This document shows positions 5,622 to 33,313 of a stretch of DNA of 64,000 bases, in pieces. Every line of letters starts with the position of its first letter. Positions within the stretch are counted from its first letter, which is position 1. The notes under the pieces are model-generated. The model saw only the letters and a list, made by a program, of their open reading frames with translations. It did not search any database and was not told where the DNA came from. The stretch lies in IMG/VR virus record IMGVR_UViG_3300042516_005475, positions 166,048-230,047 of that record. One strand, given 5' to 3'. The translations under genes were made by a program, and so were the position numbers.

Positions 5622-5739
5622 TTAGGGAACAAACTGCCATCTCGACGAGAGAGCGTAGGTGAAATCCTGAAACTTGTTTCAAATTTTATTTGCAGTTCCT
5701 GTTACTTTCAGTTAAACTAAACGTAGTAAAAATAAAAAA

Positions 5740-6042
5740 ATGAACAAAGAAATCGTTAACATCGTTCGGGACCGCAAGGGTAATCCTCGTGGTTATGTTG
5801 TCGCTACTAAGCTCGAGAATGGTAAGGTTGGCCTTGGCTGGTCTTATGTTAATGTTAAGGCTGGAGATCGCTTCGACAAGTATCTCGGCCAAAAGATCGC
5901 CATGAATCGAGCCTTTACTGGTACTGATAAGTTTGTGCCTCGTGACGTGATGAAGGTGATTGATCGGGTGTCTTCTCGCGCTGTGAAGTACTTCAAGGCT
6001 CCTATTGATGCCTACCCTCAGCAAGTTGTTACTGTTGCGTAA
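5740..6042 (+). CDS. hypothetical early protein
   Basis: Downstream of TTGCAG-17-TAAACT promoter; GWSYVN...DRFDK.LG.KIA. Confidence 0.65.
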   Translation: MNKEIVNIVRDRKGNPRGYVVATKLENGKVGLGWSYVNVKAGDRFDKYLGQKIAMNRAFTGTDKFVPRDVMKVIDRVSSRAVKYFKAPIDAYPQQVVTVA

Positions 6043-6057
6043 ACAATTGCTAATGTT

Positions 6058-6264
6058 ATGATTAAAATCCTTGTTGATCTCGATACTGAAGGTGACAGCT
6101 TCAGAGGTAATATGTCTGGAGAAGTCACCAAGATCTCTAGGGATATTGGTGAAATGATCTTGGAAGTAATTAGCAAAGATGCTACTTGTGTATCGCGAGA
6201 TATCATCGATGCTGGAGATAATAAAATTGGTGTAGTAACTATTACTAATCCTTGGAGGGAATAA
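6058..6264 (+). CDS. hypothetical protein
   Basis: 68 aa ORF co-oriented with neighbours. Confidence 0.55.
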   Translation: MIKILVDLDTEGDSFRGNMSGEVTKISRDIGEMILEVISKDATCVSRDIIDAGDNKIGVVTITNPWRE

Positions 6265-6286
6265 CTAAAAGGGCATAAATATCTTT

Positions 6287-7684
6287 ATGCCTGTTAACAG
6301 TAATGTAACAACTCCTAATTACCAAACTTTAGAGTATCAAAAGTTTGTCCAAATATATAATGATACTAGATTCCCTCCAATAACAAGTGTAAGATCTGAC
6401 TATTATAGCGGTACACAGATTGAGATATATGATAAGTATGCTGTATTAACTTTTGATATTGGGCAAAATGCAGCTCTAGGACCAGCTAATACGTTGCCGT
6501 TTGGAGATAATGCTGCTAGTGATGCCTTTGGTAGACTGAGAGTTTCTCTCCCATCTACCTTATTTAACTCTAAACAAAATAATGATAGTAATTCTTTACT
6601 CTATAGCACAGCAACTGTAAATACAGGTAGTTGGTATTTTGATAACAATAATGCCTGTACAGTCTTATCTGTTTCAGCAACAGGAGATGTTGCTATAAAG
6701 CAGTCAAAAAAGTATATGAATTATCAGCCTGGCAAATCCCAGCTGATATTCGAAACCTTTGTAATGCCTAACACAGCAGGCATAGTTAACAGAGTTGGTT
6801 TATTTGATAGCTCAACAACTTCTCCATATAGCAATAATATTGAGGGTTATTATTTTCAATGTAATAATGGAGTAAATTCTTTCCATATTGCTAATGTTGG
6901 TGACGAGCCAAGCCAAAGCGCTTTACAATCTGAATGGAACATAGACAAGCTTAACGGTACAGGTTTATCTGGTATAACATTAGATGTTACAAAAACCCAG
7001 ATTTTAGTAATAGATTACGAGTGGTTAGGGGTAGGGAGAGTTAGAATGGGGTTCTGTATTAATGGTATTATATTTTATTGTCATCAATTCGTTCATGCAA
7101 ATGAAGTCTCTCTTCCTTATCTCCAAGATCCAAACAAACCTATTAGATATGAAATTAGAAGCACAGGTGGAATAGGTTCATTAAAACAAATATGCGCTAG
7201 TGTTATGAGTGAAGGTGGAAGTGTTGATAACGCTATCCCGTTATCTATTGATACTGGGTTTGACAGTATTGGTAATATTTCAAGCAATACATTATGGCCA
7301 GCTATAACTGTTAGACTAAAAGATTCTTTTAAGAGTGTAGATATACAATTAAAAGACTTTGCTGCAATGGCTTTCTCAACTACTAATACTCTTGTAAGAG
7401 TAGTATCAAATGGTGTTATTTCTAATTCAGCAGCCTTTGTTGATATGAGCTCTGGGGCCTTGGAATATAGTATAGGCACTACTTCTACTACTCTTACTGG
7501 AGGTGTTATATTATTCAGCTCTTTTTTTAATAAGGCCAGCAATACTATTAGTCAATTAGGAGAGTCTTTATATAGTTTAGGTAGCAACATAAACGGCACC
7601 AAAGATACATTATCATTAGTATTAGTTCCATGTGGAGGAAATGAAAAGTATTTTGCTGCAATGAACTTCAAACAGTACCTATAA
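6287..7684 (+). CDS. putative virion structural protein (beta-rich)
   Basis: 465 aa S/T/N-rich; DAFGRLRVS, YQPGKSQL, DYEWLGVGRVRMGF; TAAATA 6276-6281. Confidence 0.6.
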   Translation: MPVNSNVTTPNYQTLEYQKFVQIYNDTRFPPITSVRSDYYSGTQIEIYDKYAVLTFDIGQNAALGPANTLPFGDNAASDAFGRLRVSLPSTLFNSKQNNDSNSLLYSTATVNTGSWYFDNNNACTVLSVSATGDVAIKQSKKYMNYQPGKSQLIFETFVMPNTAGIVNRVGLFDSSTTSPYSNNIEGYYFQCNNGVNSFHIANVGDEPSQSALQSEWNIDKLNGTGLSGITLDVTKTQILVIDYEWLGVGRVRMGFCINGIIFYCHQFVHANEVSLPYLQDPNKPIRYEIRSTGGIGSLKQICASVMSEGGSVDNAIPLSIDTGFDSIGNISSNTLWPAITVRLKDSFKSVDIQLKDFAAMAFSTTNTLVRVVSNGVISNSAAFVDMSSGALEYSIGTTSTTLTGGVILFSSFFNKASNTISQLGESLYSLGSNINGTKDTLSLVLVPCGGNEKYFAAMNFKQYL

Positions 7685-7729
7685 TTTAGTTGCCTTTCCT
7701 GTTCAGGTAAATTATACTGTAGGAAGAAT

Positions 7730-8746
7730 ATGGAACGTAAACTTGCTAGTGTTCGTAAGATTCAAGAAATTAAGCTCATCGAAGGTGCTGACAAGATTTG
7801 CGCCTACCGAGTTGATGGTTGGTGGGTTGTAGATAGTATTAATAAGTATAATGTTGGTGATCTTGTGGTCTACTACGAGATTGATAGCTTTCTACCAATC
7901 ACTCCTCAATTTGAGTTTCTCCGCAAGTCTTCATTCAAGAAGATGGGTGAACGTGAAGGCTTTAGGCTCAAGACTATTAAGCTCAAGGGCCAGCTCAGCC
8001 AAGGTCTCTTGACTAAAATTCCAATTGGTCTCATTGTACCTCCTAAGGAAAATGATGACATGACTGAGTTGCTCGGCATTATCAAGTATGAGCCTCCTAT
8101 TCCTGCTGAGCTAGCTGGTGAGATCAAGGGTTCGTTCCCTAGCTTCATCCCTAAGACTGATGAGGTTCGTATTCAGAACTTTGAAAGGGAAGTTGGGGTT
8201 TCTATCGCTAATGAGCGAGTTTACGCTACTGAGAAGGTTGATGGTACTAGCTTTACTTGTTATGTTAACAATGGTGAGTTTGGTGTTTGTGGTCGCAATT
8301 GGGAGTTGAAGGAGACTCAAGGTAACTCTCTTTGGCGAATGGCTAACAAGCTCAATCTTCGTGAGAAGCTCTTGAGTCTCAATCTTAACATTGCCTTGCA
8401 GGGTGAGTTGTTTGGTAGTGGAATTAATGGTAATTGGTACAAGCTCAATGATCACCGACTCATGTTCTTTACTGGATATGATATTGATAATCAAAAGCGA
8501 TTGCAGTTTAATGAGTTAATGAACTTGTTGGATAGTTTGCAGTTGGAAAGTGTTCCTGTTATTGATTATATTGCTACTATTCCAGATGGTACTATGGCTG
8601 AGATCGTTGAGTGGTCTTTGTTGTATGCTGAGTCTGAGAGTAATATTAATGCTGCTGTAGAGAACGAAGGTGTTGTTATTCGTGGTCTTGAGAAGGAGTT
8701 TAGCTTCAAGGCTATTAGTAACAAGTGGCTCCTTAGTGAAAAGTAA
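7730..8746 (+). CDS. RNA ligase (DRB0094/Rnl5-like, N-terminal OB domain)
   Basis: MERKLAS...IEGADKI OB domain; FIPKTDEVRIQN; TEKVDGTS; LQGELFG; EGVVIR; SFKAISNKWLL. Confidence 0.88.
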   Translation: MERKLASVRKIQEIKLIEGADKICAYRVDGWWVVDSINKYNVGDLVVYYEIDSFLPITPQFEFLRKSSFKKMGEREGFRLKTIKLKGQLSQGLLTKIPIGLIVPPKENDDMTELLGIIKYEPPIPAELAGEIKGSFPSFIPKTDEVRIQNFEREVGVSIANERVYATEKVDGTSFTCYVNNGEFGVCGRNWELKETQGNSLWRMANKLNLREKLLSLNLNIALQGELFGSGINGNWYKLNDHRLMFFTGYDIDNQKRLQFNELMNLLDSLQLESVPVIDYIATIPDGTMAEIVEWSLLYAESESNINAAVENEGVVIRGLEKEFSFKAISNKWLLSEK

Positions 8747-8766
8747 GGAGAGTTAATAAATATTCA

Positions 8767-12267: not shown

Positions 12268-12301
12268 TTGATTCTTAAAAATCATTGGTTATAATAATTA
12301 C

Positions 12302-12649: not shown

Positions 12650-12812
12650 TAACCTCGTTAAAGGATATGAGAATACCATTGGTATGCTTAGGATTCAAAA
12701 CGAGCAATTGCGAATAGATTTAGACGAACTACGTAAAGAAAATCTATTGTTGAGAGTAGAATTGTCTGAAATAACTAAAAAGAGAAAGAAGAAGGTTTTG
12801 AGCTTCCATTGA
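12615..12812 (+). CDS. small coiled-coil protein
   Basis: Heptad pattern LRIQNEQLRIDLDELRKENLLL. Confidence 0.5.
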   Translation: MKHQIDTMTSINNLVKGYENTIGMLRIQNEQLRIDLDELRKENLLLRVELSEITKKRKKKVLSFH

Positions 12813-13069
12813 AGAATGCCTTGTTTCTTGACACATCTTGGTACGGAATAGATTTGTGTGCCAAAAGAATTCTGAATTTCTCTGGACTTTCCTCTGCAGG
12901 TCCTTCATAATCTCTTTAATGAATGAGATGCTTGATGCTCAGGATAGCCTCTACGATGTTGCTTTCGTCTCTGCAGAAGAGTATTATGAGGAAATGCAGC
13001 CGTTAGATTTAAACTAATTTTAAACTACGTTATTTGTATTTTATTTGTATTTAGATTAAATATAACTGT

Positions 13070-13372: not shown

Positions 13373-13378
13373 ATCGTA

Positions 13379-13839: not shown

Positions 13840-15318
13840 ATGGATAAAGTGGCATTGCTATGATATATTTGTTTGTGAGCACGTCAAAGGAGAAGGTATT
13901 CTCGTTGACGTTGGACGTAACAAATGTTGGTGGTGTACTAAATGCGGTTTATTAATCGAAACTTGTAACGGACCTTTTTTCTTATGGAAATTGACGAATT
14001 TATTGAAACGGAAACTGGCAAAAAAGCCATAAAGGCAATTGAAGAGCAAAAGAAAGAACTCTATGATAATTGGGGGTACACTAAAGAAGAGCTCGATCAC
14101 ATTGAGTTGTGTATGCTTAGGATTACTAATGAGATGTATCTAACATCAGAAGAGTGGGAAGAAGATGCTAGGCATTACCTTAAGATTATTGATAAGTATC
14201 GCAAGCTATTACTTCAGATTGCTAATGCTGCAGGTGTAAAGAGTCCAGTTGTTGATAGTACAACTGTAATGGAAGAAGCTATGTTTTATACTTTGCCTCA
14301 AGAAGTTAGGCAGATAAAAGAAAGAGCAGACTGGAATTAGACGAGGTTCCTGCTGGCGGTTCCTACGGTTTGCAGCCATAATCTTTACACAATGAAGACG
14401 ATGCAAATGGAAAAAGCCCTCGACTCAATCTCCGAGCAGCTGTTTGATCGTAGCCGCTCGCTTTCAATGTTCAATCTCGAATGCCCTACTTGCGGTGGAA
14501 CCATCAGCAAGTTTCGAGACGAACTCTCTGAGCGCGAATACCGTATCTCGGGTATGTGCCAAAAGTGTCAGGATGAAGTCTTTTCCGAGATTCCTGAAGA
14601 ATAAGCTTGAGGTTCCTGAGCTTTCGGCCTATACTGATTATAGAAAATAAGATATGAACTTGTTTACTTACAACGAAACTGAAAACTGGTACGAGTACTT
14701 TGACAAAGTCAATCTGCAGCTCACAGTTTACTCTGTGGAAGTTGAAAGCAACTGTGTAACTGTTCTTAATGGTCGTTCACCTATTCTTCAGAAGAGTATG
14801 GAGATGGCTAAGTCTAATATTAACTGGACTAAAGAAGAATCTTTCGGTATTGAGTTCATTAAAATGTTGAATCACGCTATTTCTAATAACTAAAATGACA
14901 TCTATTATTACTGATGATTTTCTCCAAGAGAAGATCTGGCAGAACGAATCATTCGAAAACGCAAAGGCTGAGTTTATCAACCTTATTAAGTCAGTCAATA
15001 TCAATCAAAAGGATAAGATGAAGATGGTGCGAGAGGCTATGAATGTCTCTACAAAAATAAAGCTTGATCAGTATGCTTTGAATGCCAAGTTTAAGTTTGA
15101 AGGTTTGGGGGTTATCTAATATGAAGAATCTTTTATATATGTTAGCGGTCGCGATTGTAGTATTCCTAATAGAGGCTTTACTCATTAAGTACTTGTGGAA
15201 CTTGTTGTTTCCAGAAATGTTTAATGCTCCATTCTTGGATTTCTGGCAGGCCTTGAGTATTCTGTTGTTATGTAACATCTTGTTTAAGACTCACTCAATA
15301 AAGAAATCAGAAGATTGA
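13823..15318 (+). other. run of small hypothetical early ORFs (13823, 13984, 14392, 14654, 14895, 15121)
   Basis: Contiguous + strand ORFs with promoters at 14354 and 14607; 14392 has CPTC...CQKC; the last has two hydrophobic helices. Confidence 0.6.
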
Positions 15319-15322
15319 GAAT

Positions 15323-15350: not shown

Positions 15351-15372
15351 TTTTTACATATAAATATCTAGT

Positions 15373-15960
15373 ATGATTGATGATGTTTTAACAAGAAGCT
15401 CTTATAAAAACATTTGCCTACAGCAAAGAGAAGAGGTTAAAAACGTGTTCCCTGTATTGTTAAATAACATACTACCAAATAGAATTATTGAAGTAGGTAC
15501 TGGACATGGTGGTTTAACATTGTTCTTAAGGGATAATTTACCATCAACCTCAGATGTTTATTCTTTTGATATTGTTGAAAGTGTTTATCATAAAGATTTA
15601 AGAGATAATAAAATTAATATTTTTAATGGAAATATTTTTGAAGAAAAAACAGATTGGAATGAATTTATTTTAAAACAAGAATGGGAGCATTTATTTAACG
15701 TTAGCCCCAAAATTGTTATATGTGATGGAGGTTTCAAGCGAGGAGAGTTTAATGGTTTAGCAAAATATTTAAATATTGGGGATATTATAATGCTGCATGA
15801 TTATAGTACTGATAGAGAGTCTTTTGAAAAGTTAAACGTTTGGAATTGGTTAGAGTGTCAATATTCAGAAATTAAAAAAAGCTGTGAAACTTATAACCTA
15901 ATACCTTACATGCACGAAGAATTTCTAAATGTAGCGTGGGGATGTTTTCAAAAAAAATAA
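15373..15960 (+). CDS. class I SAM-dependent methyltransferase (CmcI-like)
   Basis: IIEVGTGHGG, YSFDI, ICDGG, GDIIMLHD; exact TATAAATA at 15359-15366. Confidence 0.75.
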   Translation: MIDDVLTRSSYKNICLQQREEVKNVFPVLLNNILPNRIIEVGTGHGGLTLFLRDNLPSTSDVYSFDIVESVYHKDLRDNKINIFNGNIFEEKTDWNEFILKQEWEHLFNVSPKIVICDGGFKRGEFNGLAKYLNIGDIIMLHDYSTDRESFEKLNVWNWLECQYSEIKKSCETYNLIPYMHEEFLNVAWGCFQKK

Positions 15961-20865: not shown

Positions 20866-20930
20866 AGAAAGGCTTGCCGTTCCTGGCAGGAACCTGTATA
20901 CTTTTTGTAGAAAAATTAATAAATAATTGT

Positions 20931-21200
20931 ATGCCTTACAATAACGATTTCAACCGTATTTCTAAGAGCTATACTTCTCTTAAGGAGAACGAGGCTGCAA
21001 TGAAGATGCTGTTTGAGAATTTTGATATTACTGAAGAAGAATTTAAGAATGCTCCTCTTATCTCTACAATTGAAGAAATGAACACGCTGCTAGAAAAGCG
21101 AGGCGATATTTCTTGTAGTGTTTCTATTAACGAGAGCAATGGTAAAGATACATCAGTTGTTACTTTGAAGTACTTGGCACAAGGAGAAGATATTGTATGA
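20931..21200 (+). CDS. hypothetical late protein
   Basis: Start moved to ATG 20931 (TAAATA 20920-20925, 5 nt upstream). Confidence 0.55.
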   Translation: MPYNNDFNRISKSYTSLKENEAAMKMLFENFDITEEEFKNAPLISTIEEMNTLLEKRGDISCSVSINESNGKDTSVVTLKYLAQGEDIV

Positions 21201-21640
21201 GTATTATTTTAGAGGCAGTTAAAGAGAGTATCTCCTTTAATTATAACAAAGGGGATAGAATCACGGTAACTAGTGCTTTCTTAAAAGACAAACGAAAACT
21301 AGATCCAAAGATTAGAGCTGATTTGCAGAGACTACTTCGTACCTGGCAGCGCAGAGGGGGAGTAGATTTTCCTATTTTCGAATTTAAGAACCGTAGAAAG
21401 TTTCCAATGGACTTTGGAGATAGCAGAGGAATAGTTAAATCTTGTATGCCTCAATATGGCATTGAATTGCGTAAGAGAGTACCTCCAGTACATCTTAACG
21501 TGTTTATTACTGAAACTAATCCTATCTTTGGTAACCCAAAGACTCCTAACCCCAAGGGTAAGCTATTCATTTTTGACCGAATTTTCGATAATTACGACAA
21601 ATATAGGAATTATATCTCAGAAAAATACGAAGGCTGCTAA
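21197..21640 (+). CDS. hypothetical protein
   Basis: 147 aa, ATGA-coupled to the upstream gene. Confidence 0.6.
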   Translation: MSIILEAVKESISFNYNKGDRITVTSAFLKDKRKLDPKIRADLQRLLRTWQRRGGVDFPIFEFKNRRKFPMDFGDSRGIVKSCMPQYGIELRKRVPPVHLNVFITETNPIFGNPKTPNPKGKLFIFDRIFDNYDKYRNYISEKYEGC

Positions 21641-21697
21641 CTTTTCCTGTTGCAGTTCCTGTCCGAGGCATCTATACTGAATACAGAAAATAAAATT

Positions 21698-22033: not shown

Positions 22034-22107
22034 GCAGAATTTAGTTGCAGTTCCTCTGAAATTCGCATACACTAAAACCGTAAATTAGATACACCTACAC
22101 AAACGAT

Positions 22108-22980
22108 ATGAAGATTGAAAAGCTGACGAAGAAGCAAGAGAAGGAACTCGAAGCCTTTTATAAGGAGTGTCTCGAGATTGGACGTTCTTGCGAACCTATT
22201 AATCACGAGATTGCTGAGGGTATTATCTCTGGCTTCTATAAGCGGCTCGATATGCAGGCTCCTAAGTTCGTTTACTTCCCGAGCCCTCATGCAATCCTCA
22301 AGAGCGATTCGTCTATCGACTTGAACATGTACTTTGGTGGCCAGCAATGGATTCACTGGAAGGCCTTGTACAAGTTCGCTGAGCGTATCGGTGTTGAGTT
22401 CTCTAAGGAAGACAGTCAGTTGCTTGACGAGTGGTTCAATGAGTCTAAGCATTTGCATTGGTGGTTCCCGTTTACTGATGTTTGCTACATTAGCGAGCGA
22501 CCTATTCGGTTGACTGTTAACGAGGCTGGTGCCTTGCATAACGAGAAGTTCAAGGCGATTGAGTATGCTGACGGTTGGGGTATGTATTACCTCAATGGTA
22601 TCAAGGTGCCGGAGTACCTGGTTGTTACTCCGAGCGAGGATCTTAGCATTGACTTCTTTTTGAAGGAGAAGAATGCTGATGTTAAGGCTGAGTTCGTTCG
22701 TAAGTTTGGTGTTGAGCGAATGCTCGACATGGGTAAGAAGGTTGATACTTACGAGAAGTACAAGCAGAAGGATTATCCTTACTGGCATGAGAGTCAGTAC
22801 GAGCTGTGGGATATGGCTAAGTTGTTCGAGGGTCTCGACTATCAGCCGTATGTTAAGATGGTTAATCAGACTACTGGCATCTGGCATGTTGAGGCAGTTA
22901 GTCCTAGTTGCCGTAACCTTAAGGATGCAATTAAGGAGCGGTTCGGAGGCAAAGAGATGAAGATCATCGCGATCAAGTAA
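22108..22980 (+). CDS. DUF6745-like protein
   Basis: WWFPF..VCYISERP, LHNE..KAIEYADGWG.YYLNGI.VP, NA.V..E.VRK.G.ER. Confidence 0.75.
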   Translation: MKIEKLTKKQEKELEAFYKECLEIGRSCEPINHEIAEGIISGFYKRLDMQAPKFVYFPSPHAILKSDSSIDLNMYFGGQQWIHWKALYKFAERIGVEFSKEDSQLLDEWFNESKHLHWWFPFTDVCYISERPIRLTVNEAGALHNEKFKAIEYADGWGMYYLNGIKVPEYLVVTPSEDLSIDFFLKEKNADVKAEFVRKFGVERMLDMGKKVDTYEKYKQKDYPYWHESQYELWDMAKLFEGLDYQPYVKMVNQTTGIWHVEAVSPSCRNLKDAIKERFGGKEMKIIAIK

Positions 22981-22985
22981 GTTCG

Positions 22986-23014: not shown

Positions 23015-23434
23015 GTATGAAAGACTTAAAGATTACAAAGGCTCTAAAGTACCAATCAGCTACACTCAGAGGAGATCTTGATATTGTGCTGTTTAGACAA
23101 TTACCTGATAATTTTGCTAATCATTTGTTAGATAGGTTATCTCACAGATTACTAGATAACACACCTAGGTATGGGTATCATGAGCTGATGGAAGAACAAA
23201 ATCGTATTAAAAATGAATCAAGAGCTATACCAACAGACAATTGACTTCAGAGAAAAGACTTCCAAAAGGGTTGGTAAACAACTCTCAAGAAAGGCTTATA
23301 GGGTACTTGACGAGGTTTTGTGGGGAAATCTCTATGAAACACTCTTTTGGGGACTAGACAAAGAAATTAGAGTAAGTTTGAGGAAGGAAAAAGCTTGAGG
23401 TTCCTGTGAGGTGCCTATAGACTACTTGTAACAA

Positions 23435-24574
23435 ATGAAGATTACCTACGACACGCTTTATTCTGCCGACAGTAAGAACAACATTCGCATTTGGCGAATG
23501 GAACAGGATGGTGCGCAGTACCACACTACTTCAGGCTTGGAAGATGGTAAGCAGGTCACTACAGAGTGGTCTACTGCTGAGCCTAAGAACACTGGCAAGG
23601 CTAACGCTACTACTGCTACTCAGCAGGCCACTCTAGAGATTGAATCTCAATACGCTAAGAAGCTCAAGAGCGGTTATTTCCGAAGCAAGAATGATGTCAA
23701 TAAGATTACCTTTATTGAGCCTATGCTTGCTCAACCACTACATAAGCTCGCTAAGCAGCCTGACTTTGCGAATGAGAAGTGGGGCTTGCAATGTAAGTTC
23801 AACGGTAATCGATGCATTGCTACTAAGAATGGATTGTTCTCTCGTACTGGAGAGAAGTACTATAGTGTCCCACACATCGAGGGAGCTCTTAAGAGTTTCT
23901 TTGAGGTATGTCCAGCAGCTGTGCTAGATGGAGAATTGTTTAACAATCATCTCCGTACTCAGCTTAACGAGATCAACAAGCTTATTCGTAAGTCTAAGCA
24001 TATTAGCCAAGAAGACTTTGCTAAGAGTGAAGAGCTTGTTAAGTTCTACATCTATGATGGATACAATTTCTGTGGTTATAATGAGCTTTCTGCCTATCAT
24101 CTTCGCAAGAAGGCAATTGATAACTTCTTGCTCACTTGTAAGCTCAAGTGTTTGGCTAGTGTAGAGACTATTGCTATCAATTCTACTGATCAGATGAAAG
24201 AAGAGTTTAATAGACTCTTGGCTGATCAACAAGAGGGCGCTATTTTGCGTTGGATGGATGCTCCTTACGAGCACAAGCGCTCTAAGTACCTTGTTAAGGT
24301 CAAGGTTGATGATGATAGCGAGGCTACTATTGTCGACATTACTGATGGAGATGGTAACTGGAAGGGTGCTGCTACTAATGTTACATTGAACTGGAAGGGT
24401 AAGGTGTTTGATGGTGTGTTCAAGGGCAAGTATGAGAAGCGAGCTGATATCCTCAAGGATAAGAAGAATTGGATTGGCAAGGAGGTTACCTTTCTCTACA
24501 TGGGTCTCACCGGACTCGGCACCCCGAATTTCGCCCGAGTCGACCCTGACAACTGCTTCAAAAATGACCGCTGA
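23435..24574 (+). CDS. ATP-dependent DNA ligase
   Basis: IEPMLAQ, KFNGNRC (KxDG-type motif I), LDGELF, EGAILR, KRSKYLVKVK, C-terminal OB fold. Confidence 0.88.
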   Translation: MKITYDTLYSADSKNNIRIWRMEQDGAQYHTTSGLEDGKQVTTEWSTAEPKNTGKANATTATQQATLEIESQYAKKLKSGYFRSKNDVNKITFIEPMLAQPLHKLAKQPDFANEKWGLQCKFNGNRCIATKNGLFSRTGEKYYSVPHIEGALKSFFEVCPAAVLDGELFNNHLRTQLNEINKLIRKSKHISQEDFAKSEELVKFYIYDGYNFCGYNELSAYHLRKKAIDNFLLTCKLKCLASVETIAINSTDQMKEEFNRLLADQQEGAILRWMDAPYEHKRSKYLVKVKVDDDSEATIVDITDGDGNWKGAATNVTLNWKGKVFDGVFKGKYEKRADILKDKKNWIGKEVTFLYMGLTGLGTPNFARVDPDNCFKNDR

Positions 24575-25705
24575 TGCGGTTCCTGCTGGAGGTTCCTGCC
24601 GGGAGACTGTATCATCTTTGTAATGAATGAGAATTTCGTCACTGTCGCAGATGTAATCGATTTCTTCAAAACGATTCCTCCTGATGCGAAGATTCGTGTT
24701 AAACAGGAATGCTCCCGTGGTTATGAAACGTATACAAAGTATGTTAATGCTGTTAAGTATACCACCTTCATTGACGGCATCGATTACTCTGAAAGAAATA
24801 ACTCTGTTGATTTTGGCATTTAATTAATATGATTACTCATTTTACTAATAAAGCCTGGTTGGTTACTTGGGAGTTTTTAGGGCCTCGTATGGGTTGTGTA
24901 AGCTATGGTATTCATGGCATTTACAACAAAGAGAATCTCGCTAAGGAGGCTGCGGAACTTCTTAAAAAGAACCACAATTGGCGAGAGCCTAATACTTTTG
25001 CCATAAAGGTGAAAGAGGTTAGTCTCGATGGAACTCACGAACTGTTTAACTACGTATATTAACATGAAAGTTTACGCTATTCTTGAACACGATGATGAAT
25101 ACGAAGTAGCTATTAGCAAGATCTTTAGCAATCGCAAAAAAGCTCGTAAGTATGTATTTGAAAAATACTATGCTAACTGCGATGCTTCAGATGCTAAAGT
25201 TATTAAAGATATTGATTATTGGATTGATGTTGTAAATGTTGAATAATATGAATAAAGAAAAACTGAAACTTACAAGTGAACAAGGACAAGCTATCATTTA
25301 TGGAAGGGATAGTAATTTCGTTACTACCCATAAAAAGATAGTTGGAAAGAGGAGATGGGTTCTTGTATATGAAATTGTAGTGCAACGTAAATCTGACGGC
25401 AAATACTTCAAAGATGTCTACGATATTGGAGCAACAGAAAATGAGGAACAAGCCCCATACGAATTCTCTGAGCCTAATTTCATAGAGGTAGAACCGGTAG
25501 AAACAACTATTATTGAATACATTTAACATGACTGATCAAGACTATAAGGTTATTAGCGCAATGCGTACTTACGGAGGCTCTTTTGTGCAGTCCTTGGGTA
25601 TTTGCGCGCTTCATGCAGATGCTAGTAACCTCGCCAAGATCAAGGCTACCTGGCCTGATTACTGGCAGGAGTATGTTGTGATGGCTGAACAAGACGAGAA
25701 GAGAG

Positions 25706-26110: not shown

Positions 26111-26578
26111 CTTTTGGCGGTTCCTGCTTGAGGATCCGGGCAGGAACCGCCATAATGATTGCAGAAAATAAGATCTGACATGAAATACAAATACAACAAA
26201 GAAAATCTGGTTAAGGCCTTCAAGAATCTCGCTGAATGGGCTGAGAATCTCGATGCTAAGACTGACAAGGATGTGATTGGAACTGCCTGGGTCCAGTTGG
26301 AAAGTCTCACTACCGAGATCCAAGATAATCACGATGACATCTTTGGTACTGAGGGTTACGAAGCAACCATTCTCGGTAAAGACTAAGAAATATGAAACTG
26401 ATTGATGTTGATAACGCCGAGGTTGAAGTGGAAGATAGTTGGCAAGATGAATGTCCCCAATGTGGTGACACGAATGTGGAATGTTTCTATGTGCCAAACT
26501 GGGCTGCAACTCGTTGTTATGACTGCCTGGTTAACGAAGCGATAAAGTTTAATTACAAAATTCAAGATAACTAAAAAT

Positions 26579-26953: not shown

Positions 26954-28815
26954 TATGATTGTTAGGGTTAACTGAAACGGAACCAAACGATAATAACATA
27001 TACCCACGATGGAAGAACAACCACTCAACCCTTACGATTATTCAAACGAATATTTGAATCAATATGGAATTACTGACGTAGATGGTTTCAGGAAGTCTCA
27101 AAAAAGAAATCAAGTTATCTATGAAAAAGTGTTTCTAACGGCTTACCAAAATTTGACGGGCTCAGCAGCGGGCCTGGGTGAGATTCTCCAACTCCCTGCT
27201 GGAGGTTCCCCTGAGGAACCTTCATAATGATTGCAGAAAATAAGATATGAAAGATTTACAAGATAAGAGAGGGTGGATGATATGACTAACAAAGATCGAT
27301 TGCGTCTGATTAATGCTATTACTACTATACAAGGTACTTGTAGTGCAAAACACTTTGTTAGTACAGTTGCAGATTGTCGTTGGATTATCAATATCCTTTC
27401 AAACACCGAGCTAAGCAGCGAGTCTGTAAAAATTGAACTCGACTTGTTTAAAAAGTTGGCCCCTGAATTCGCTGAAATTTCTGCTTGAGGTTCCTGGCAG
27501 GAACCGCCATAATGATTGCAGAAAATAAGATATGACTAACGATCAAGTTCCCTTTGTGCCTACTCGCGACGATCTCATTGGTTACATCAGCGACACCTAC
27601 AAGGAGATCAACGGCTTTCGCCCTCACCCTATCTGGTCTGAGATCTCTTACGAGCAGCTGGACAAGTGGGGTCGTGAGCTGGCTACTGAGGTTGATACGC
27701 ATCGCAAGAGCGAAGTGAAGCGCGAGCGCATTGCTCGTAACCTTCGCCGGGCTCAGCAGAAGGCCTGGGATGAGAAGAAGCGCTCTTATTTCACCCCGGT
27801 CAACTTCACTATTGGTCAACTCGTCTCCGCTATCTAATGAAAACTATGAAGACTCCTAAAACTAAGATTGACAAGGCTGCTAAGAAGTATGATTACGTAG
27901 TTATTGGTCGCTTTGATCACGACGACCGCGGTATGGGTGATATGAGCTACAGAAAAGCTATTTTGTATACCGCTGACGAACTCAACGAGGTTATTAAAAA
28001 AAGTGGACATTCTTGGATTGTGAAAGTGTATAAGGTTGGAGAAGAGTTTAATATCTCGTTCAAAGTCGAAAAAGCTAATTAATATGAAGACCCCTACTAT
28101 CAAATACGTTGACGGCATTCGCCAATATTTTGTTGAGGCTCCTTTGGTTGACAAGTATGGTAGCATTACTGCTGCTCGTACGGACAAAGACACTGCTCAA
28201 GCCTTGCTGCTAGAGAACGAAGCAATTACTAAGGGAGGTCACATTTATTATTTCGCCTTGAAGCACATTGGTCTCAATGTTTACTCTGTTAAGCTTCGCC
28301 CTAAGGGTTCGATTGACACTTACATTGTCGAAAGCTTTGAGAAACATCTTATCAACGAAGGACCTGAAGGAGGTCTCCCCACTGCTCGGTATTAATTAAA
28401 CTAAAGCCTCTTGGAAATATGAAATTGAAAACAGGAAAGTATATGCTCCTAGGCAACCCAAACTCTCTATTTGGCCCAGACATCCGATATGCTGATACTC
28501 TCAAGGGACTAAAGCTCAAGGCCTGGGAGAAGGATGAGATAAAGCGAGGTACGAATGCTTTGTTTGTTGCTCGGGATACTAAGATTGTTAGGGTTAACTG
28601 CAACGGAACCAAACGATAATAATAACATATGAAAGAAACTGTTACAATTAGCAAAGAAGAATACGAAAGCCTCTTGGAGGACAGTAACAAGCTCTTGGCA
28701 CTTGAGGGTGCTGGAGTTGATAACTGGGAGGGTTATGATGAAGCTATGGAAATGATGAGAGAAATGAATGAGGAAGATAGTAGCAATTAAAAAATCTTAA
28801 GTTATAATCTCTCTT

Positions 28816-29337
28816 ATGAGCGAACAAACTTATATGAAGCTCGGTGATAAGGTTAAGAGGCCTACTCTTAGCGCTAATAATATTAACCGCTCTAACAAGT
28901 CATTTGTTAGGATGGTTGACAGCTATCAGAAATGGAATGAGTCTATCACTGCTGATGAGCCTCGCGAGACCTATGAGAAGGACATCTTTGAGTGTCTCTT
29001 TGAACCTGACTTGGATGGTTATAATTTGGCAGAGCATCTGAAGAGTAAGGTTTATCTTGAGCCTGATGCCTCGCTTGTAGAGATTTTGGATGATATGATC
29101 TTCGTCAAGAGGGCTCTAGAAGATGATTTGATTGCTCAATGGGTAGAGGAGAACTTTTTGACTGTCCCCGAAGATGTTATCGGTAAGAAGGTTAATGGTA
29201 AGGCTGGGTTTAAGACGCTAAACGGATACTATATTACTGCTATTCATCAGAAGAGGTATCAAGTTGTTATTAGTGAATCAACAGAGAAGAAGAACAATGG
29301 CTACTTCGTAAATTACGAGACACTTGTATTTGTATGA
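28816..29337 (+). CDS. hypothetical protein
   Basis: 173 aa ORF 7 nt after TATAAT. Confidence 0.6.
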   Translation: MSEQTYMKLGDKVKRPTLSANNINRSNKSFVRMVDSYQKWNESITADEPRETYEKDIFECLFEPDLDGYNLAEHLKSKVYLEPDASLVEILDDMIFVKRALEDDLIAQWVEENFLTVPEDVIGKKVNGKAGFKTLNGYYITAIHQKRYQVVISESTEKKNNGYFVNYETLVFV

Positions 29338-30468
29338 TTGAGTCTATTAAAAAGGCTATACCTCAACCTTACTTAAGGCAGAAGATTTCTCTTGTTACAA
29401 GTATTAAACTAAATCAAAGTTGTGATATTGAGCAGGACTTGTCTACTAATATTAGAGACAATATTTGTTCTCATTTGTTCTGGGAACTTAAGAGAGAAGA
29501 TTCTAATTTCTTGCATAATGTTAATATCTATTAAAAATGCTATTCATGAGGCAGAGTCTCGGGCTTACTTTAGGCAGAACCTATCTGTTAATAACAATAT
29601 TAGAATGTATCTTAATTCTAATATTAAAAGAGACTTGTGTACTAATATCAGAGACAATCTTCATTCTCCTTTGTTCTGGGAATTGATAAGAGACTTCGAT
29701 TAATCTCAACATTAATGAATACTGCTAAAGAGTTTAGTGCTAATCATAAAATTCATACCAGACTCTATACGGATTTGCGGTTGAGTATGTTTGATGTGTT
29801 TAATTTTAATTGTTCACCAACGAGTAAAGAACTCTTAAAAAGTATATCTGATAATCTTAGACCCATTAACTTTATTAGCAATCAGATATATAGTAACTTA
29901 AATATTGAAAAATATGAATGAGATATCAATATCTATTAATAAAGAAATAATTGAAATGACTAATCAAGTTGATGTTATGATTGAAATGGCAAAAGATTCT
30001 GACAAATTAGAGAGTGAGAATTTTATTGCAAAACTAAACAATATTCCTTGGCCTGAGCCATTAGATCCTCCAACTACTACTGCTGAGGCAGAAGCCAGAC
30101 AAAGAAGGTTTGAAGATGATATCAATTAATAAAGAAATAGGTAAATACATTAATGGTTTAAAGGATTAATATGGAAGAATGTAAAGCTGCTGTACCTACG
30201 AAGAAAAACATGGGGCACTTCATACGCAAGTGGTATTATGGAGCTCTCTTTTGGATGTATTTGAACATATGGTGTCGGTATTGTTATCGCCATGTTATGC
30301 GATGGATGCATAAGTTTAATTTTCACCACACCACTGTAGTTAATATTGTAGAAGAAAAGAATGAATTGACAGGTAAACATCAACGCAAGCATTTGTGGTG
30401 TCAATGGTGTGGATTGCGAGGCGACATTTTAAAGTTTAATCATGATGAGTAATTGAATAAATAATATT

Positions 30469-31706
30469 ATGTTCAACGAATTAGCTAACTCTCTTATTCA
30501 AGAGAGTTTCCACCCAATCAGAGCTAAAGAGCGTATAAAAAAGTTAATTGAGACCCCTCAAGGAGCATTCCAATATGCTTTAAAAATTAAAAAAGGTAGA
30601 GCACCAGAAGTTGAGCCTATTATTTTAAAAAAAGCCTCTACAGCTATTCAATATGCTGCATTTATTATTAAAGGTAGATGGCCAGAGGCAGAGCCAATAA
30701 TATTAAAAAATGCTGCTACAGCTTACAATTATGCGCTTAATGTAATAGACGGTAGATGGCCAGAAGCTGAGCAAGTAATATTACAAAGCAATAATGCTTC
30801 TATCGCGTCATCTTATGCTGCGTTTGTAATAAATGGTAGATGGCCAGAGGCTGAACCAATAATTAAAGATAATCCTAGCGCTTCTCTCTCCTACGCAAAA
30901 TATTTACTAAAGGAAAGATTCCCAGCTGGAGAAAAAGCAATAAAAGAGAGCCCCGCACATGCAAAAGACTATGCTATTTTTGTTCTAAGAGATAGATGGC
31001 CTGAAGCTGAGCCTACTATTAAAAAGGATGAAGAACAATGGGAAAGTTATAAAGATTACTTTGGAATAGAGGAAGAAGATTAATATGCCATTAAAACCTA
31101 TTAATACTAAACCTAGAATAGATAAACTAAAGAAATGGCCTTATCATGCATATTATATTGCTAAAGATATTAAAAAAGGCAGATGGCCAGAAGCTGAACC
31201 TTATATCAAAAACGATGCCAGATGGGCATATTTCTATGCCAGAGACATCATCAAAGGCAGATGGCCAGAGGCTGATTCTGTGATCATGAATTCCAGATGG
31301 GCTGTAGCATACCTCACCATTATTTAATATGCCACTAAAACCTCTTAAAACTAAAGAAAGATTAAATGCTAAGATAGCTGAGATAAAATCATTACAACAT
31401 CGTTATAGTGCTGCTTCGGTCGCTAGAATGTCTTTTGAATTAGCTAATGGTATTGAAATACGCATACCAGAACTAGAACCCTTTATATTTAAAGATCATT
31501 GGGCTGCATATGAATATGTTAGATCAGTAGTAAAGAAACCTTTGCCAGAAGCTGAACCAATCATTCTAGATGACCCATGGACTGCCTTTTATTATGCTGT
31601 TAAAATTAAAAAAGAGAGATGGCCAGCAGCAGAACAAGTACTAAAAAACAACCAGTTAGAAGGTTTTTGGAACAAATATAAAGAAAAATTCAATATTAAA
31701 GACTAA
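30469..31706 (+). CDS. three tandem WPEAEP helical-repeat genes (30469-31083, 31085-31327, 31329-31706)
   Basis: ~24 aa unit A..YA..VIKGRWPEAEP.I; TAA-T-ATG junctions; TAAATA 30458-30463. Confidence 0.75.
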
Positions 31707-31788
31707 TTTGCCAGCCTCGCTGAATAAATCTGCCGCAAAAAAAAGCTTGAACTGCCTGTGAAAAGTTATAGAGATAATAAATATAAAC

Positions 31789-32094
31789 ATGAGCAACATC
31801 AATGACCCAATTTTCGAGGCTTATAGAGATATGGATCGTTCAGCAGGATTTAGAAGATTCATGGCTAGTCAACAAAACAAACCAGAGACTAATTCAGAAG
31901 AACAATCTAGCTGGGCAGATAAAATCTCTGCGACATCTGAACATGGACAAATGGTAGCTAATAAACTAAAAGAAATATTCAAAGAGAATCACGGATTATC
32001 ACCAGCATTGTGGGGAAGAGCCTTGAAGATATGCAATGAGTTAACTAAACTAATTGATGAAGCTAATTCAAATATGGGGAAAATGATTAAATAA
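31789..32094 (+). CDS. hypothetical late protein
   Basis: TAAATA 31778-31783; MSNINDPIFE leader. Confidence 0.6.
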   Translation: MSNINDPIFEAYRDMDRSAGFRRFMASQQNKPETNSEEQSSWADKISATSEHGQMVANKLKEIFKENHGLSPALWGRALKICNELTKLIDEANSNMGKMIK

Positions 32095-32104
32095 TAAGAA
32101 AAAG

Positions 32105-32133
32105 AAGAGCCCTCTGTTTCGAGGGCTTTTTTT
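32105..32133. terminator. probable bidirectional terminator
   Basis: A-run, AGAGCCCTC/GAGGGCTTT hairpin, T-run between convergent genes. Confidence 0.75.
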
Positions 32134-32878
32134 ATCGTCTATTAGAATTAATTGAAGATTGTACATTTCTCATAGTAGTATTTCTTCTGTTACCTACATC
32201 ACTAGACATGTTACGCAATTCATCTGCACTTAAATTACCTTGCTTTAAACGCTCTCTTTTTAGTCTCAAATCTTGCAAGTCTGCTAACATTTGTTTGTAC
32301 TTCTCTTTAATTTCTGGAGAAAGCTTAGGGTCTTTTAATTTATTGTTTATACTTGCCTCTTGTTGCGCGTATGGATCAGGCTCTTGATTAGGGGTTTGCT
32401 GGGATTGGGATTGATAAGCACTTACTGGAGTCCCGCAATTAAGGCAAAATCTATCTCCAGAGTTTAATTTAGAACCGCAGTTACCACAAAAGCCTCCTGC
32501 TTGTTGCTGTTGTTGATTCTGATTAGATCTTTGCTGTTGTTGATTCTGATTAGTCTGCTGTTGTTGATTCTGATTAGATCTTTGCTGTTGTTGATTCTGA
32601 TTAGTCTGCTGTTGAGTTGGTGTACTATTGTTCAAAGCTTCATAAGCAGCCTGTATTTTAATAAAATCATTATGAGTATCTCTCCCTGAGGTGTCAGGAT
32701 GATATTGTATAGATAATTTTCTAAAAGATTTCTTTAATTCATCTTTGGATAAATTACCAGCATTATTAATACCATATTGCTGCATTATTTGTATAGCCTC
32801 ATCTCTTGAATAAGTTTCTTCCAAAAAAATATTACTGCCAAATAAAACCTCATCAATTAAAGAGCTTAAAAGTCTCAT
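32132..32878 (-). CDS. J-domain (DnaJ-like) protein with Q/N repeat and zinc ribbon
   Basis: LKKSFRKLSIQYHPD...FIKIQAAYEAL; Q/N tract; FCGNCG...FCLNCG. Confidence 0.85.
   Translation of the reverse strand: MRLLSSLIDEVLFGSNIFLEETYSRDEAIQIMQQYGINNAGNLSKDELKKSFRKLSIQYHPDTSGRDTHNDFIKIQAAYEALNNSTPTQQQTNQNQQQQRSNQNQQQQTNQNQQQQRSNQNQQQQQAGGFCGNCGSKLNSGDRFCLNCGTPVSAYQSQSQQTPNQEPDPYAQQEASINNKLKDPKLSPEIKEKYKQMLADLQDLRLKRERLKQGNLSADELRNMSSDVGNRRNTTMRNVQSSINSNRR
32506..32614. repeat. alternating 27/24-nt tandem repeat encoding the Q/N tract
   Basis: gattagatctttgctgttgttgattct and gattagtctgctgttgttgattct units. Confidence 0.85.
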
Positions 32879-32946
32879 AAGAATATTTATGAAATTTTCC
32901 TAAAAAAGCTTGAACTGCCTGTGAAAAGTTCATATCATAAGTAGGA

Positions 32947-33243
32947 ATGTTTAAAGAAGACGACTCCATCCAACCGTTCACTGGCTCCATCGATGCACTC
33001 CTTGAGCAATCTATGATGCTAGATCCTAATGCTATTGCTCTTCAGGTAGAAGAAGAAAAGTATAATCTGGGTATGTTGGAAATTATGCGTATGTTCGAAT
33101 GTACTTACGAAGAGGCTGAGTTCTTGTTCAATGAGGCTCAACAGCAAATGATCAAACAAGAGCTTGAGGCGCTCATCGCTGAGGGTAAAGTAAAGATCGT
33201 CGGAACCGATGAAAGTGGGAATACCCTGTATGCCTCTGCCTGA
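32947..33243 (+). CDS. hypothetical acidic protein
   Basis: 98 aa after TTGAAC-17-TATCAT promoter. Confidence 0.55.
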   Translation: MFKEDDSIQPFTGSIDALLEQSMMLDPNAIALQVEEEKYNLGMLEIMRMFECTYEEAEFLFNEAQQQMIKQELEALIAEGKVKIVGTDESGNTLYASA

Positions 33244-33313
33244 GTTTCCCGGAGAAACTTCTTGAGGTTCCCCACGTTCGCCTCCATAATGTATGGGTAG
33301 TTAAGAACATCAT

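What the first reader, a model, noticed from the sequence alone, without database searches (positions are those of the whole stretch)
5690..33290. Early promoters carry a conserved operator-like element between -35 and -10
Seen: 14 promoters with exact 17-nt spacers, 13 beginning TTCC and one ATCC (e.g. TTGAGG-TTCCTGAGCTTTCGGCC-TATACT). At 20874 and 27485 the spacer is a palindrome (GTTCCTG-G-CAGGAAC); at 14345, 24578 and 26119 a further GGTTCCTGC copy lies 13-14 nt upstream, often with a weak -35 (TGGCGG, TGGAGG). Several share the leader GATT(G/A)(C/T)AGAAAATAAGAT. Known: T4 MotA binds a box near -30 to redirect sigma70. Inference: a phage or host factor controlling a dedicated regulon.
Basis: partly seen in the sequence, partly recalled or inferred. 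Interest (0 to 1): 0.7.

Follow-up and report, generated by a model that had tools for sequence, protein, structure and literature searches.

The report
Boxed promoter class in lake phage
An uncultivated T4-like lake phage has a second class of host-type promoters, each with the same short GGTTCC box next to the -35 element; the box probably binds an unidentified regulator, and the promoter cassettes also mark where genes are swapped between related phages.

Summary
All 14 sites exist at the stated coordinates (17 pattern matches in the window against 1.26 expected). A 15th copy with an 18-nt spacer lies at 4411, and three more lie upstream of the window. The genome is a 230-kb T4-like myovirus from lake water.

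The TTCC is the core of a GGTTCC(TG) box at about -31 to -24. In 4 window promoters an inverted GGAACC at a fixed position completes a 17-bp palindrome, GGTTCC-N5-GGAACC. Others carry a direct copy 13 bp upstream.

The phage also has about 21 consensus promoters of a leaderless type without the box. The box therefore marks a separate promoter class rather than a general promoter requirement.

At one orthologous promoter, TTGAGG-TTCCT survives in a relative with 61% protein identity while the rest of the spacer has diverged. More distant relatives, bacterial genomes and other viral contigs lack it.

The cassettes also behave like the PeSL cassettes of T4-type phages: identical cassettes sit before different genes in close relatives. 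Only 3 of 18 fold into a significant stem-loop.

No MotA, AsiA, sigma or HTH protein was found, and there are no transcript-start data. A protein-binding box, operator or activator, is the best reading, but it is an inference. "Early" is unproven.

The parts
4411..4440 (+). Class B promoter variant: GTGGCG, 18-nt spacer starting TTCC, CATAAT, leader GATTGTAGAAAAT. No ORF follows; it precedes a tRNA/ncRNA cluster.
5690..5718 (+). Class B promoter: TTGCAG, TTCCTG..., TAAACT. ATG of a 100-aa ORFan 21 nt after the -10.
7690..7718 (+). Class B promoter: TTGCCT, TTCCTG-TT-CAGG..., TATACT. Precedes the RNA ligase gene 7730-8746.
12883..12911 (+). Class B promoter with weak -35: TGGACT, TTCCTC..., CATAAT. 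ATG 7 nt after the -10.
   Evidence: ortholog in L122 at 17588 has TTCC-N5-GGAA
14345..14382 (+). Upstream direct copy GGTTCCTGC (14345-14353) plus class B promoter (14354-14382): TGGCGG, TTCCTA..., CATAAT.
14607..14635 (+). Class B promoter: TTGAGG, TTCCTG..., TATACT, leader GATTATAGAAAATAAGAT-ATG.
   Evidence: ortholog in L122 at 19419
20874..20902 (+). Class B promoter with full dyad: TTGCCG, TTCCTG-G-CAGGAAC, TATACT.
   Evidence: orthologs in L040, L041 and L047
21650..21678 (+). Class B promoter: TTGCAG, TTCCTG..., TATACT. Its upstream edge (21643) is a synteny breakpoint in L040.
22045..22073 (+). Class B promoter: TTGCAG, TTCCTC..., TACACT. Precedes the DUF6745 gene 22108-22980.
23395..23423 (+). 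Class B promoter: TTGAGG, TTCCTG..., TAGACT. Precedes the ATP-dependent DNA ligase gene 23435-24574.
   Evidence: orthologs in L040-L051
24578..24615 (+). Upstream direct copy GGTTCCTGC (24578-24586) plus class B promoter (24587-24615): TGGAGG, TTCCTGC..., TATCAT. Cassette-to-gene junction at 24630 is a breakpoint in L042, L044 and L045.
   Evidence: the L121 ortholog carries the full dyad GGTTCC-N5-GGAACC
26119..26156 (+). Upstream copy GGTTCCTGC (26119-26127) plus class B promoter (26128-26156): TTGAGG, ATCCGG-GCAGGAACC, CATAAT. The two arms form the strongest hairpin of the set.
   Evidence: (z = -6.6); the L045 ortholog has TTCC
27200..27228 (+). Class B promoter with dyad: TGGAGG, TTCC-CCTGA-GGAACC, CATAAT, plus the shared leader.
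27485..27513 (+). Class B promoter with full dyad: TTGAGG, TTCCTG-G-CAGGAACC, CATAAT. The 57-nt cassette 27479-27535 is 100% identical in L047, where other genes flank it.
33262..33290 (+). Class B promoter: TTGAGG, TTCCCC..., CATAAT. Precedes the KaiC/RadA-like ATPase gene 33314-34222. Its orthologs give the conservation test.
32910..32938 (+). Box-less or decayed neighbour: TTGAAC, TGCCTG..., TATCAT. The orthologous promoter in L121 has TTGCCC, TTCCTGGCAG.

Best explanation
These sites are a distinct class ('class B') of sigma-70-type promoter cassettes in an uncultivated freshwater T4-like jumbo phage. Each carries a GGTTCC(TG) box that overlaps the last two bases of the -35 hexamer and fills about -31 to -24. 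The box is the constant left half of a 17-bp dyad, GGTTCC-N5-GGAACC, spanning about -31 to -15. The right half is intact in about a quarter of the promoters and degenerate in the rest. Some promoters instead have a second direct copy 13 bp upstream, flanking a weakened -35 (TGGAGG or TGGCGG). I infer that the box is the binding site of a sequence-specific protein, phage or host encoded and not identified, that co-regulates this promoter class separately from the phage's box-less consensus promoters. A dyad lying between -35 and -10 favours a repressor that shuts the class off. An activator docking at -30, working like T4 MotA, is the second option. The cassettes also serve as units of gene shuffling between related phages, as PeSLs do. 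Shown: the motif, its register, the two promoter classes, conservation in relatives and cassette shuffling. Inferred: protein binding, the sign of regulation and the timing.
For: (1) Non-randomness and register: 17 matches against 1.26 expected. TTCC starts exactly 17 nt before the -10 in 17 of 18 genome copies and 18 nt before it in one. (2) Information profile: spacer positions 1-6 and 14-15 are conserved, while positions 7-13 carry almost no information. (3) The inverted half-site GGAACC sits at one fixed position, spacer positions 10-15, in 8 of 35 distinct cores from this phage and its relatives. Twelve cores match at 5 of 6 or better, against 2.1 in shuffles. (4) There are two classes. 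About 21 promoters read TTGAnn, 16/17 nt, TATAAT, 5-8 nt, ATG, with 30% GC spacers and no box, and they are spread over the whole genome. The 18 boxed promoters have 54% GC spacers, poorer -35 and -10 matches (3.6 and 4.8 of 6), and lie only between genome 154 and 200 kb. (5) Selection: the orthologous promoter of the ATPase gene keeps TTGAGG-TTCC(T) in relatives at 91%, 85% and 61% protein identity while the rest of the spacer changes completely. The second -35 base toggles T/G between orthologs while the box is kept. (6) Lineage specificity: a 50% marine relative, a 72% relative with canonical TTGACA promoters, 42 bacterial hits and 28 IMG/VR hits show no clusters of the motif, so it is not a general host promoter consensus. 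(7) Only 3 of 18 fold significantly better than shuffles, so a hairpin is not the common denominator.
Against: No DNA-binding candidate was found. MotA, AsiA, RegA, Sigma70 r2/r4/r4_2 and HTH_3 gave nothing over threshold in the whole phage. 105 small window proteins gave no regulator family in Pfam or PHROGs. The genes directly downstream are ORFans. No transcript starts or timing data exist: the two RNA runs hold only contigs of relatives that read through a promoter. Among close orthologs the box is not significantly more conserved than the rest of the spacer (1/28 against 8/77 variable columns). The selection argument therefore rests on paralogs and on one 61% ortholog. Strict register next to -35 fits common descent of the cassettes or direct RNAP contact as well as it fits a factor. 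Both direct and inverted second copies occur, which is unusual for a single dimeric binder.
Confidence: 0.45

Rival explanations
1. PeSL-type mobile regulatory cassettes with no dedicated factor. The GC-rich inverted repeat in or around the spacer is a stem-loop that attenuates read-through and offers homology for recombination. The box is conserved because all cassettes descend from one ancestor and are homogenised by recombination.
For: RB49/phi1 PeSLs place their stem-loop most often between -35 and -10 (PMC2839356). Here the cassettes sit in a region of small ORFans. The same 57-nt cassette (27479-27535, 100% identical) fronts different genes in L047. The same gene has different cassette variants in L044 and L045. 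Synteny breaks fall at 21643, 24630, 26133 and 27479/27535. One DNA contig joins 27495 to 26139 across two cassettes.
Against: Only 3 of 18 cassettes fold significantly (z < -2; mean z -0.86). The left arm is constant while the right arm is often absent, with no covariation. TTCC is kept where the rest of the spacer has randomised, which neutral descent does not predict. No T-run follows the stems. The 27495-to-26139 joint was not seen in four other runs and may be an assembly path through a repeat. Breakpoints are not clearly enriched at cassettes relative to gene boundaries in general (my own count: 7 of 18 breakpoints lie at cassettes, which occupy 8 of an estimated ~30 gene boundaries).
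Confidence: 0.22
2. A MotA-like activator box. The boxed promoters are middle-mode promoters with weakened -35 elements. They need a phage activator that docks at about -30, with or without remodelling of sigma region 4.
For: TTCC lies at about -29 to -26, against the Mot-box core GCTT at -30 to -27 with 11-13 nt to the -10 (PMC1524935). The register relative to -10 is strict. The -35 and -10 are poorer than in class A. TTG and TGG toggle in the -35 between orthologs. Direct repeats TTCCTGC-N6-TTCCTGC flank weak -35 hexamers at 14354 and 24587, recalling lambda cII sites (from my own knowledge). Downstream genes include DNA ligase, RNA ligase and tRNAs.
Against: There is no MotA or AsiA homolog. 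A weak AsiA-like ORF failed the profile and family checks. Most boxed promoters keep a usable TTG -35 and a 17-nt spacer, so they could work with host RNAP alone. A dyad reaching to -15 would clash with RNAP. The orthologous promoter at 32910 has lost the box yet keeps its promoter elements.
Confidence: 0.2
3. Direct recognition by RNA polymerase. The box is an extended -35 or spacer element read by the host primary sigma, by an alternative host sigma, or by phage-modified RNAP, with no separate DNA-binding factor.
For: The box abuts -35 in fixed register in every copy, and no phage regulator was found.
Against: About 21 strong consensus promoters in the same phage lack the box. Relatives at 50-72% identity use box-less promoters. 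No bacterial genome shows recurrent use of the composite, although the pattern searched was strict. Base-specific RNAP contacts at -29 to -26 are not known (from my own knowledge). This reading does not explain the inverted copy or the upstream copy.
Confidence: 0.12

Closest known systems
PeSLs (promoter-early stem-loops) of T4-type phages RB49/phi1, T4/PST and KVP40/nt-1 (Arbiol et al. 2010, PMC2839356; Comeau et al. 2014, PMC4122927)
   Same: Repeated sigma-70-like promoter cassettes sit between small ORFans in plastic regions of a T4-like genome. A GC-rich inverted repeat often lies between -35 and -10. The consensus is lineage-specific. Cassettes lie at insertion, deletion and replacement junctions between close relatives.
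   Different: Here the constant feature is one box in fixed register, not a stem-loop in five variable positions. Most copies have no significant hairpin. There is no Shine-Dalgarno part, and no AT-rich upstream block. Terminator activity and mini-circles are untested.
T4 middle promoters: Mot box (a/t)(a/t)(a/t)TGCTTtA centred at -30, a sigma-70 -10, MotA and AsiA (PMC1524935)
   Same: A short conserved box at about -30, at fixed distance from a sigma-70-type -10. It defines a promoter class apart from the consensus early promoters and fronts replication and repair genes and tRNAs.
   Different: The box sequence differs. No MotA or AsiA gene is present. The TTG of the -35 is mostly retained. 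There is dyad symmetry with a second half-site, which Mot boxes lack.
Phage operators overlapping -35/-10 (lambda cI OR sites; P22 Arc operator between -35 and -10 of Pant; the dispersed P1 C1 operators), cited from my own knowledge
   Same: A palindrome of about 17 bp covers the spacer of a sigma-70 promoter. Many dispersed copies form one regulon, with graded half-site quality.
   Different: The phage looks strictly lytic and T4-like. No repressor gene is recognisable. Only 4 of 15 window copies have both half-sites. The left half-site is locked to the -35.
MerR-family promoters, with the operator dyad inside the spacer (from my own knowledge)
   Same: A dyad lies between -35 and -10.
   Different: MerR promoters have over-long 19-20 bp spacers that the activator untwists. 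Here the spacer is the optimal 17 bp.

Membership tests
PeSL cassettes | Sigma-70-like -35 and -10 with a spacer of about 17 nt, directly upstream of a gene start | tested here: met
   18 copies, 17 with an exact 17-nt spacer. A start codon lies 7-44 nt after the -10 (28 nt or less in 14 of 17). This is sequence-level evidence only.
PeSL cassettes | A stable stem-loop in or beside the promoter that acts as terminator or attenuator | tested here: not met
   MFE z < -2 in only 3 of 18 (genome 159291, window 26128 and 27200); mean z -0.86. No T-runs follow. Terminator activity cannot be tested here.
PeSL cassettes | Located in hyperplastic regions in front of ORFans | tested here: met
   All copies lie between genome 154 and 200 kb among small + strand ORFs. 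10 of 10 first genes had no Pfam family over threshold.
PeSL cassettes | Cassettes coincide with insertion, deletion or replacement junctions between closely related phages | tested here: met
   Junctions at 21643, 24630, 26133 and 27479/27535. An identical cassette fronts different genes in L047. The same gene has different cassettes in L044 and L045. Enrichment over plain gene boundaries is not significant.
PeSL cassettes | Shine-Dalgarno sequence at the 3' end of the cassette | tested here: not met
   SD-like tetramers occur upstream of 22 of 207 genes, against 28 of 207 in a control window. G is depleted before start codons.
PeSL cassettes | Recombination between neighbouring cassettes yields mini-circles or deletions | tested here: inconclusive
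   One contig in run X13 joins 27495 to 26139. The joint was not seen in X1, X4, X9 or X15, where contigs simply break at the repeats.
T4 MotA-dependent middle promoters | MotA ortholog encoded by the phage | tested here: not met
   PF09158 (MotCF) gives no match at E <= 1 in the whole 230-kb genome.
T4 MotA-dependent middle promoters | AsiA co-activator | tested here: not met
   PF09010 gives 17.8 bits, below its cut-off. The 94-aa ORF has no PHROG hit. Its homologs carry no Pfam family. A profile search against the PDB does not find AsiA.
T4 MotA-dependent middle promoters | Mot box TGCTTtA, 11-13 nt upstream of the -10 | tested here: not met
   The box here is GGTTCC(TG). Only the position is comparable: TTCC ends 13 nt before the -10 (PMC1524935).
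Classical phage repressor operators | Dyad-symmetric site overlapping the core promoter | tested here: met
   GGTTCC-N5-GGAACC at 20874, 27200 and 27485. At 26128 the right arm is in place and the left arm is displaced upstream. The right arm sits at a fixed position in 8 of 35 cores. It is degenerate in the remainder.
Classical phage repressor operators | Cognate repressor gene in the phage | tested here: not met
   No HTH_3, Sigma70_r4 or other regulator family was found. A novel fold or a host protein is not excluded.
MerR-type promoters | Over-long 19-20 bp spacer | tested here: not met
   The spacer is 17 nt in 17 of 18 copies and 18 nt in one.

The most novel reading that the evidence does not exclude
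A T4-like phage lineage lacking MotA and AsiA has evolved its own promoter-class switch. An unrecognised DNA-binding protein, of a new fold or borrowed from the host, reads a GGTTCC box at -30 (dyad GGTTCC-N5-GGAACC). It turns about 18 promoters on or off as a block, separately from about 21 consensus leaderless promoters. This would be a new solution to the early/middle transition in T4-type phages. The same box-bearing cassettes also drive modular gene exchange.
Probability: 0.3. Interest if true: 0.7.

Novelty: new variant of a known kind. Interest (0 to 1): 0.45.

Why it matters
How T4-type phages without MotA and AsiA order their early and middle transcription is unresolved. That group includes most environmental ones, cyanophages among them. 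This genome offers a clean, testable handle. It has two architecturally distinct sigma-70-type promoter classes, one tagged by a short invariant box with operator-like symmetry. It also has a graded series of natural relatives in which the box is kept, lost or absent. If a factor binds the box, that would be a new phage transcription regulator and a portable promoter/operator pair. If none does, the case refines the PeSL concept: a conserved box, not a stem-loop, can be the constant part of a mobile promoter cassette. The phage is uncultivated and its host unknown, which limits immediate impact.

Tried and rejected
- AsiA-like protein: a weak PF09010 hit (94-aa ORF, genome 18995-19279, minus strand). 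It was rejected after no PHROG hit, no Pfam on 24 homologs and no AsiA in a profile search of the PDB.
- MotA, RegA, Sigma70 r2/r4/r4_2 and HTH_3 in the whole phage: nothing over threshold.
- Regulator hunt among 105 small window proteins (Pfam, PHROGs) and by Atlas look-alikes for the genes behind the two best palindromes: no DNA-binding lead.
- Hairpin as the common feature: rejected, only 3 of 18 significant.
- Host promoter consensus: an exact composite pattern gave only single scattered hits in 185,579 species genomes (42 loci) and in IMG/VR (28 loci), with no clusters.
- Transcript starts from public RNA runs: only two metatranscriptomes hold small parts, as contigs of relatives. One contig reads through promoter 21650, so it gives no transcript-start information.
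- Cassette-to-cassette joint 27495 to 26139: seen in one run and not replicated in four others.
- RNA-ligase relatives in IMG/VR (39-52% identity) are too distant and are not syntenic.
- megablast and tblastn against GenBank phages: no near relative listed. The best protein hits, at about 35%, are to cyanomyovirus structural proteins.
- Known operators with GGTTCC/GGAACC in the literature: nothing relevant.
- sigma-54, ECF sigma, LexA (alpha-proteobacterial GTTC-N7-GTTC) and Dcm-site readings were checked by eye against the alignment. They were dropped because spacing or partner elements do not fit.

Full report
**Context.** The window is the last 64 kb of a 230,047-bp viral record (G000:C1:166048-230047). 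The record is 36% GC, judged complete, and comes from lake-water metagenomes. PHROG matches to a gp20-type portal, gp43-type DNA polymerase, large terminase, tail sheath and a gp6-type baseplate wedge show a T4-like myovirus. TATAAATA motifs lie 3-10 nt before the ATG of several genes, so T4-type late promoters are present. No near relative is listed among GenBank phages. The best protein hits, at about 35%, are to cyanomyovirus structural proteins. Genes have no Shine-Dalgarno signal: 22 of 207 against 28 of 207 in a control window. The host is unknown.

**The observation.** All 14 sites exist exactly as described, on the + strand. Each reads T(T/G)Gnnn, a 17-nt spacer, then (T/C)AnnnT. The spacer begins TTCC in 13 sites and ATCC at 26128.
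- The pattern has 17 matches in the window against 1.26 +/- 1.08 in dinucleotide shuffles.
- GGTTCCTG occurs 10 times against 0.97 expected.
- The palindromes at 20874 and 27485, the upstream GGTTCCTGC copies at 14345, 24578 and 26119, and the shared leader are confirmed.
- A further copy with an 18-nt spacer lies at 4411-4440. Three more lie upstream of the window, one on the minus strand and divergent from its neighbour.
- The aligned consensus is ttCTGC-TTGAGG-TTCCTG-(7 uninformative positions)-g..Cc-(T/C)ATA(C/A)T. Information is concentrated in the -35, the first six spacer bases, spacer positions 14-15 and the -10.

**Anatomy of the box.** Across 35 distinct cores from this phage and its relatives, an inverted GGAACC sits at one fixed place, spacer positions 10-15, in 8 cores. 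Several others have a 4-of-6 match at that place. Twelve cores reach 5 of 6 or better, against 2.1 in shuffles. The full element is therefore a 17-bp dyad, GGTTCC-N5-GGAACC, from about -31 to -15. Its left arm overlaps the last two bases of the -35 and is nearly invariant. Its right arm is graded. In other copies a direct TTCCTGC lies immediately upstream of the -35, giving TTCCTGC-N6-TTCCTGC. This includes the copies with weak TGGAGG or TGGCGG hexamers. Only 3 of 18 cassettes fold significantly better than shuffles (mean z -0.86). A hairpin is therefore not the common feature.

**Two promoter classes.** The same phage holds about 21 promoters of a different build: TTGAnn, 16 or 17 nt of 30% GC spacer, TATAAT, 5-8 nt, then ATG. 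These would give leaderless or near-leaderless mRNAs.
- They are spread over the whole genome and interleaved with the boxed ones in the window, at 421, 3985, 12268, 20458, 32910 and 59976.
- The boxed class has 54% GC spacers, poorer matches to TTGACA and TATAAT (3.6 and 4.8 of 6), and variable leaders of 7-44 nt. It occurs only between genome 154 and 200 kb.
- The box is thus not a requirement of the host polymerase. It marks a subset.
- Downstream genes are mostly ORFans, plus RNA ligase, ATP-dependent DNA ligase, a KaiC/RadA-like ATPase and a tRNA cluster.

**Relatives.** Metagenome contigs with 85-98% identical DNA ligase (L040-L051), and contigs with a 91% (L121) or 85% (L122) identical ATPase, keep boxed promoters at orthologous places.
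- The ATPase promoter gives the clearest test. TTGAGG-TTCC(T) is unchanged at 91%, 85% and 61% protein identity (L123), while the other spacer bases are completely different.
- Between orthologs the second -35 base flips T/G three times while the box stays. At 26128 ATCC corresponds to TTCC in L045.
- At 32910 this phage has TGCCTG where L121 has TTCCTGGCAG, so the box can be lost while the promoter stays.
- L123 has mostly box-less consensus promoters. A 72% relative (L052) uses tttc-TTGACA-N16/17-TATAAT. A 50% marine relative (L124) uses aGTTGCGC-type -35 elements. Neither L052 nor L124 has the box.
- Exact composite patterns occur only singly in 42 bacterial loci and 28 viral loci.
- Among close orthologs alone, the box is not significantly better conserved than the rest of the spacer: 1/28 against 8/77 variable columns.

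**Shuffling.** Synteny between the window and its relatives breaks at cassette edges.
- L040 lacks 20941-21642 and resumes at 21643.
- L042, L044 and L045 keep the cassette through 24630 and then continue with a different gene.
- L047 has a cassette 100% identical to 27479-27535 in front of the gene that follows 26384 here. L047 also lacks 26961-27478.
- L044 and L045 carry different cassette variants before the same gene.
- This is the behaviour described for PeSLs, whose stem-loops lie most often between -35 and -10 (PMC2839356, PMC4122927).
- Other breaks fall at plain gene boundaries. By my own count, 7 of 18 breakpoints lie at cassettes, and cassettes occupy 8 of an estimated ~30 gene boundaries, so enrichment is not significant.
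- A contig in one DNA run joins 27495 to 26139. Four other runs do not show it.

**Search for a factor.** MotA, AsiA, RegA, sigma-70 regions 2 and 4, and XRE-type HTH models find nothing over threshold in the genome. A weak AsiA-like ORF failed further checks. 105 small proteins of the window have no regulator family in Pfam or PHROGs. Public RNA runs give no transcript-start information.

**Interpretation.** The data show a selected, lineage-specific cis element that defines a promoter class. They do not show what reads it.
- Protein-binding box (0.45 overall; best supported, but inferred). Arguments for it: fixed dyad geometry with half-sites one helical turn apart, a constant half-site with graded partners, extra direct copies, and absence from the consensus class.
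- Within that reading, a dyad covering -31 to -15 favours repression, meaning shut-off of this class. The near-coincidence with the position of the T4 Mot box (PMC1524935) and the weakened -35 hexamers keep an activator in play.
- Pure PeSL-type stem-loop/recombination cassette: 0.22.
- Direct polymerase recognition: 0.12.
- 'Early' timing is unproven.

Noticed in passing
window 4450-5690: A 1.2-kb non-coding stretch lies behind the 4411 promoter. It holds a tRNA-Lys(UUU) gene (about 4555-4873, ending CCA) split by a 244-nt group I intron in the anticodon loop (Rfam RF00028, 70.9 bits). A second tRNA-like gene at 5170-5311 carries an insert of about 56-86 nt; ARAGORN in intron mode proposes anticodon CUA, with a weak anticodon stem, so this is uncertain. 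A third T-arm/acceptor-like piece lies at 5567-5621. Default ARAGORN sees none of them.
   Followed up: partly
whole genome; window 421, 3985, 12268, 20458, 32910, 59976, 61743: About 21 consensus promoters have the ATG 5-8 nt after the -10, predicting leaderless mRNAs. There is no Shine-Dalgarno signal anywhere in the phage. Relatives L052, L123 and L124 show the same build.
   Followed up: partly
window 34650-41220: An unbroken array of about 35 tiny (55-85 aa), often overlapping + strand ORFs in 29-30% GC DNA. It has almost no intergenic space and only two internal TTGACT-N17-CATAAT sites (37448, 38640). The sister contig L121 has the same array.
   Followed up: no
window 30678-31650 and 41064-42130: A repeated protein motif, ...YA..(I/V)I.GRWPEAEP.I..., is encoded several times in tandem within ORFs (DNA word ATGGCCAGAGGCTGA). 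It looks like a repeat-protein family with paralogs in two places.
   Followed up: no
window 26392-26555: In every DNA run laid, this 160-nt piece has 3-30 times the assembler depth of its neighbours and carries a block of variant letters. It seems to be shared with other, more abundant genomes in the same lakes.
   Followed up: no
window 15359-15366: A T4-type late promoter motif, TATAAATA, lies 6 nt before the ATG of gene 15373-15960, in the middle of the boxed-promoter region. A similar motif precedes a tRNA gene at genome 161486.
   Followed up: no
window small ORFs (probably 28629-28790, by synteny with L121 5789-5953): One small protein matches the T7 gp5.9 RecBCD-inhibitor family (PF25708, E 8.6e-21). 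This hints that the unknown host has RecBCD. Two other small proteins carry a type IV pilin-like N-methylation motif, and one is a cREC_REC domain (probably 4019-4411).
   Followed up: no
window 27247-27285: The cassette ATG at 27247 opens only a 12-codon frame. The 71-aa ORF behind it starts out of frame at 27273 or 27282, with MTNK..., which resembles the MTND... start of the gene behind cassette 27485. This looks like a duplicated cassette-plus-gene start that has slipped.
   Followed up: partly
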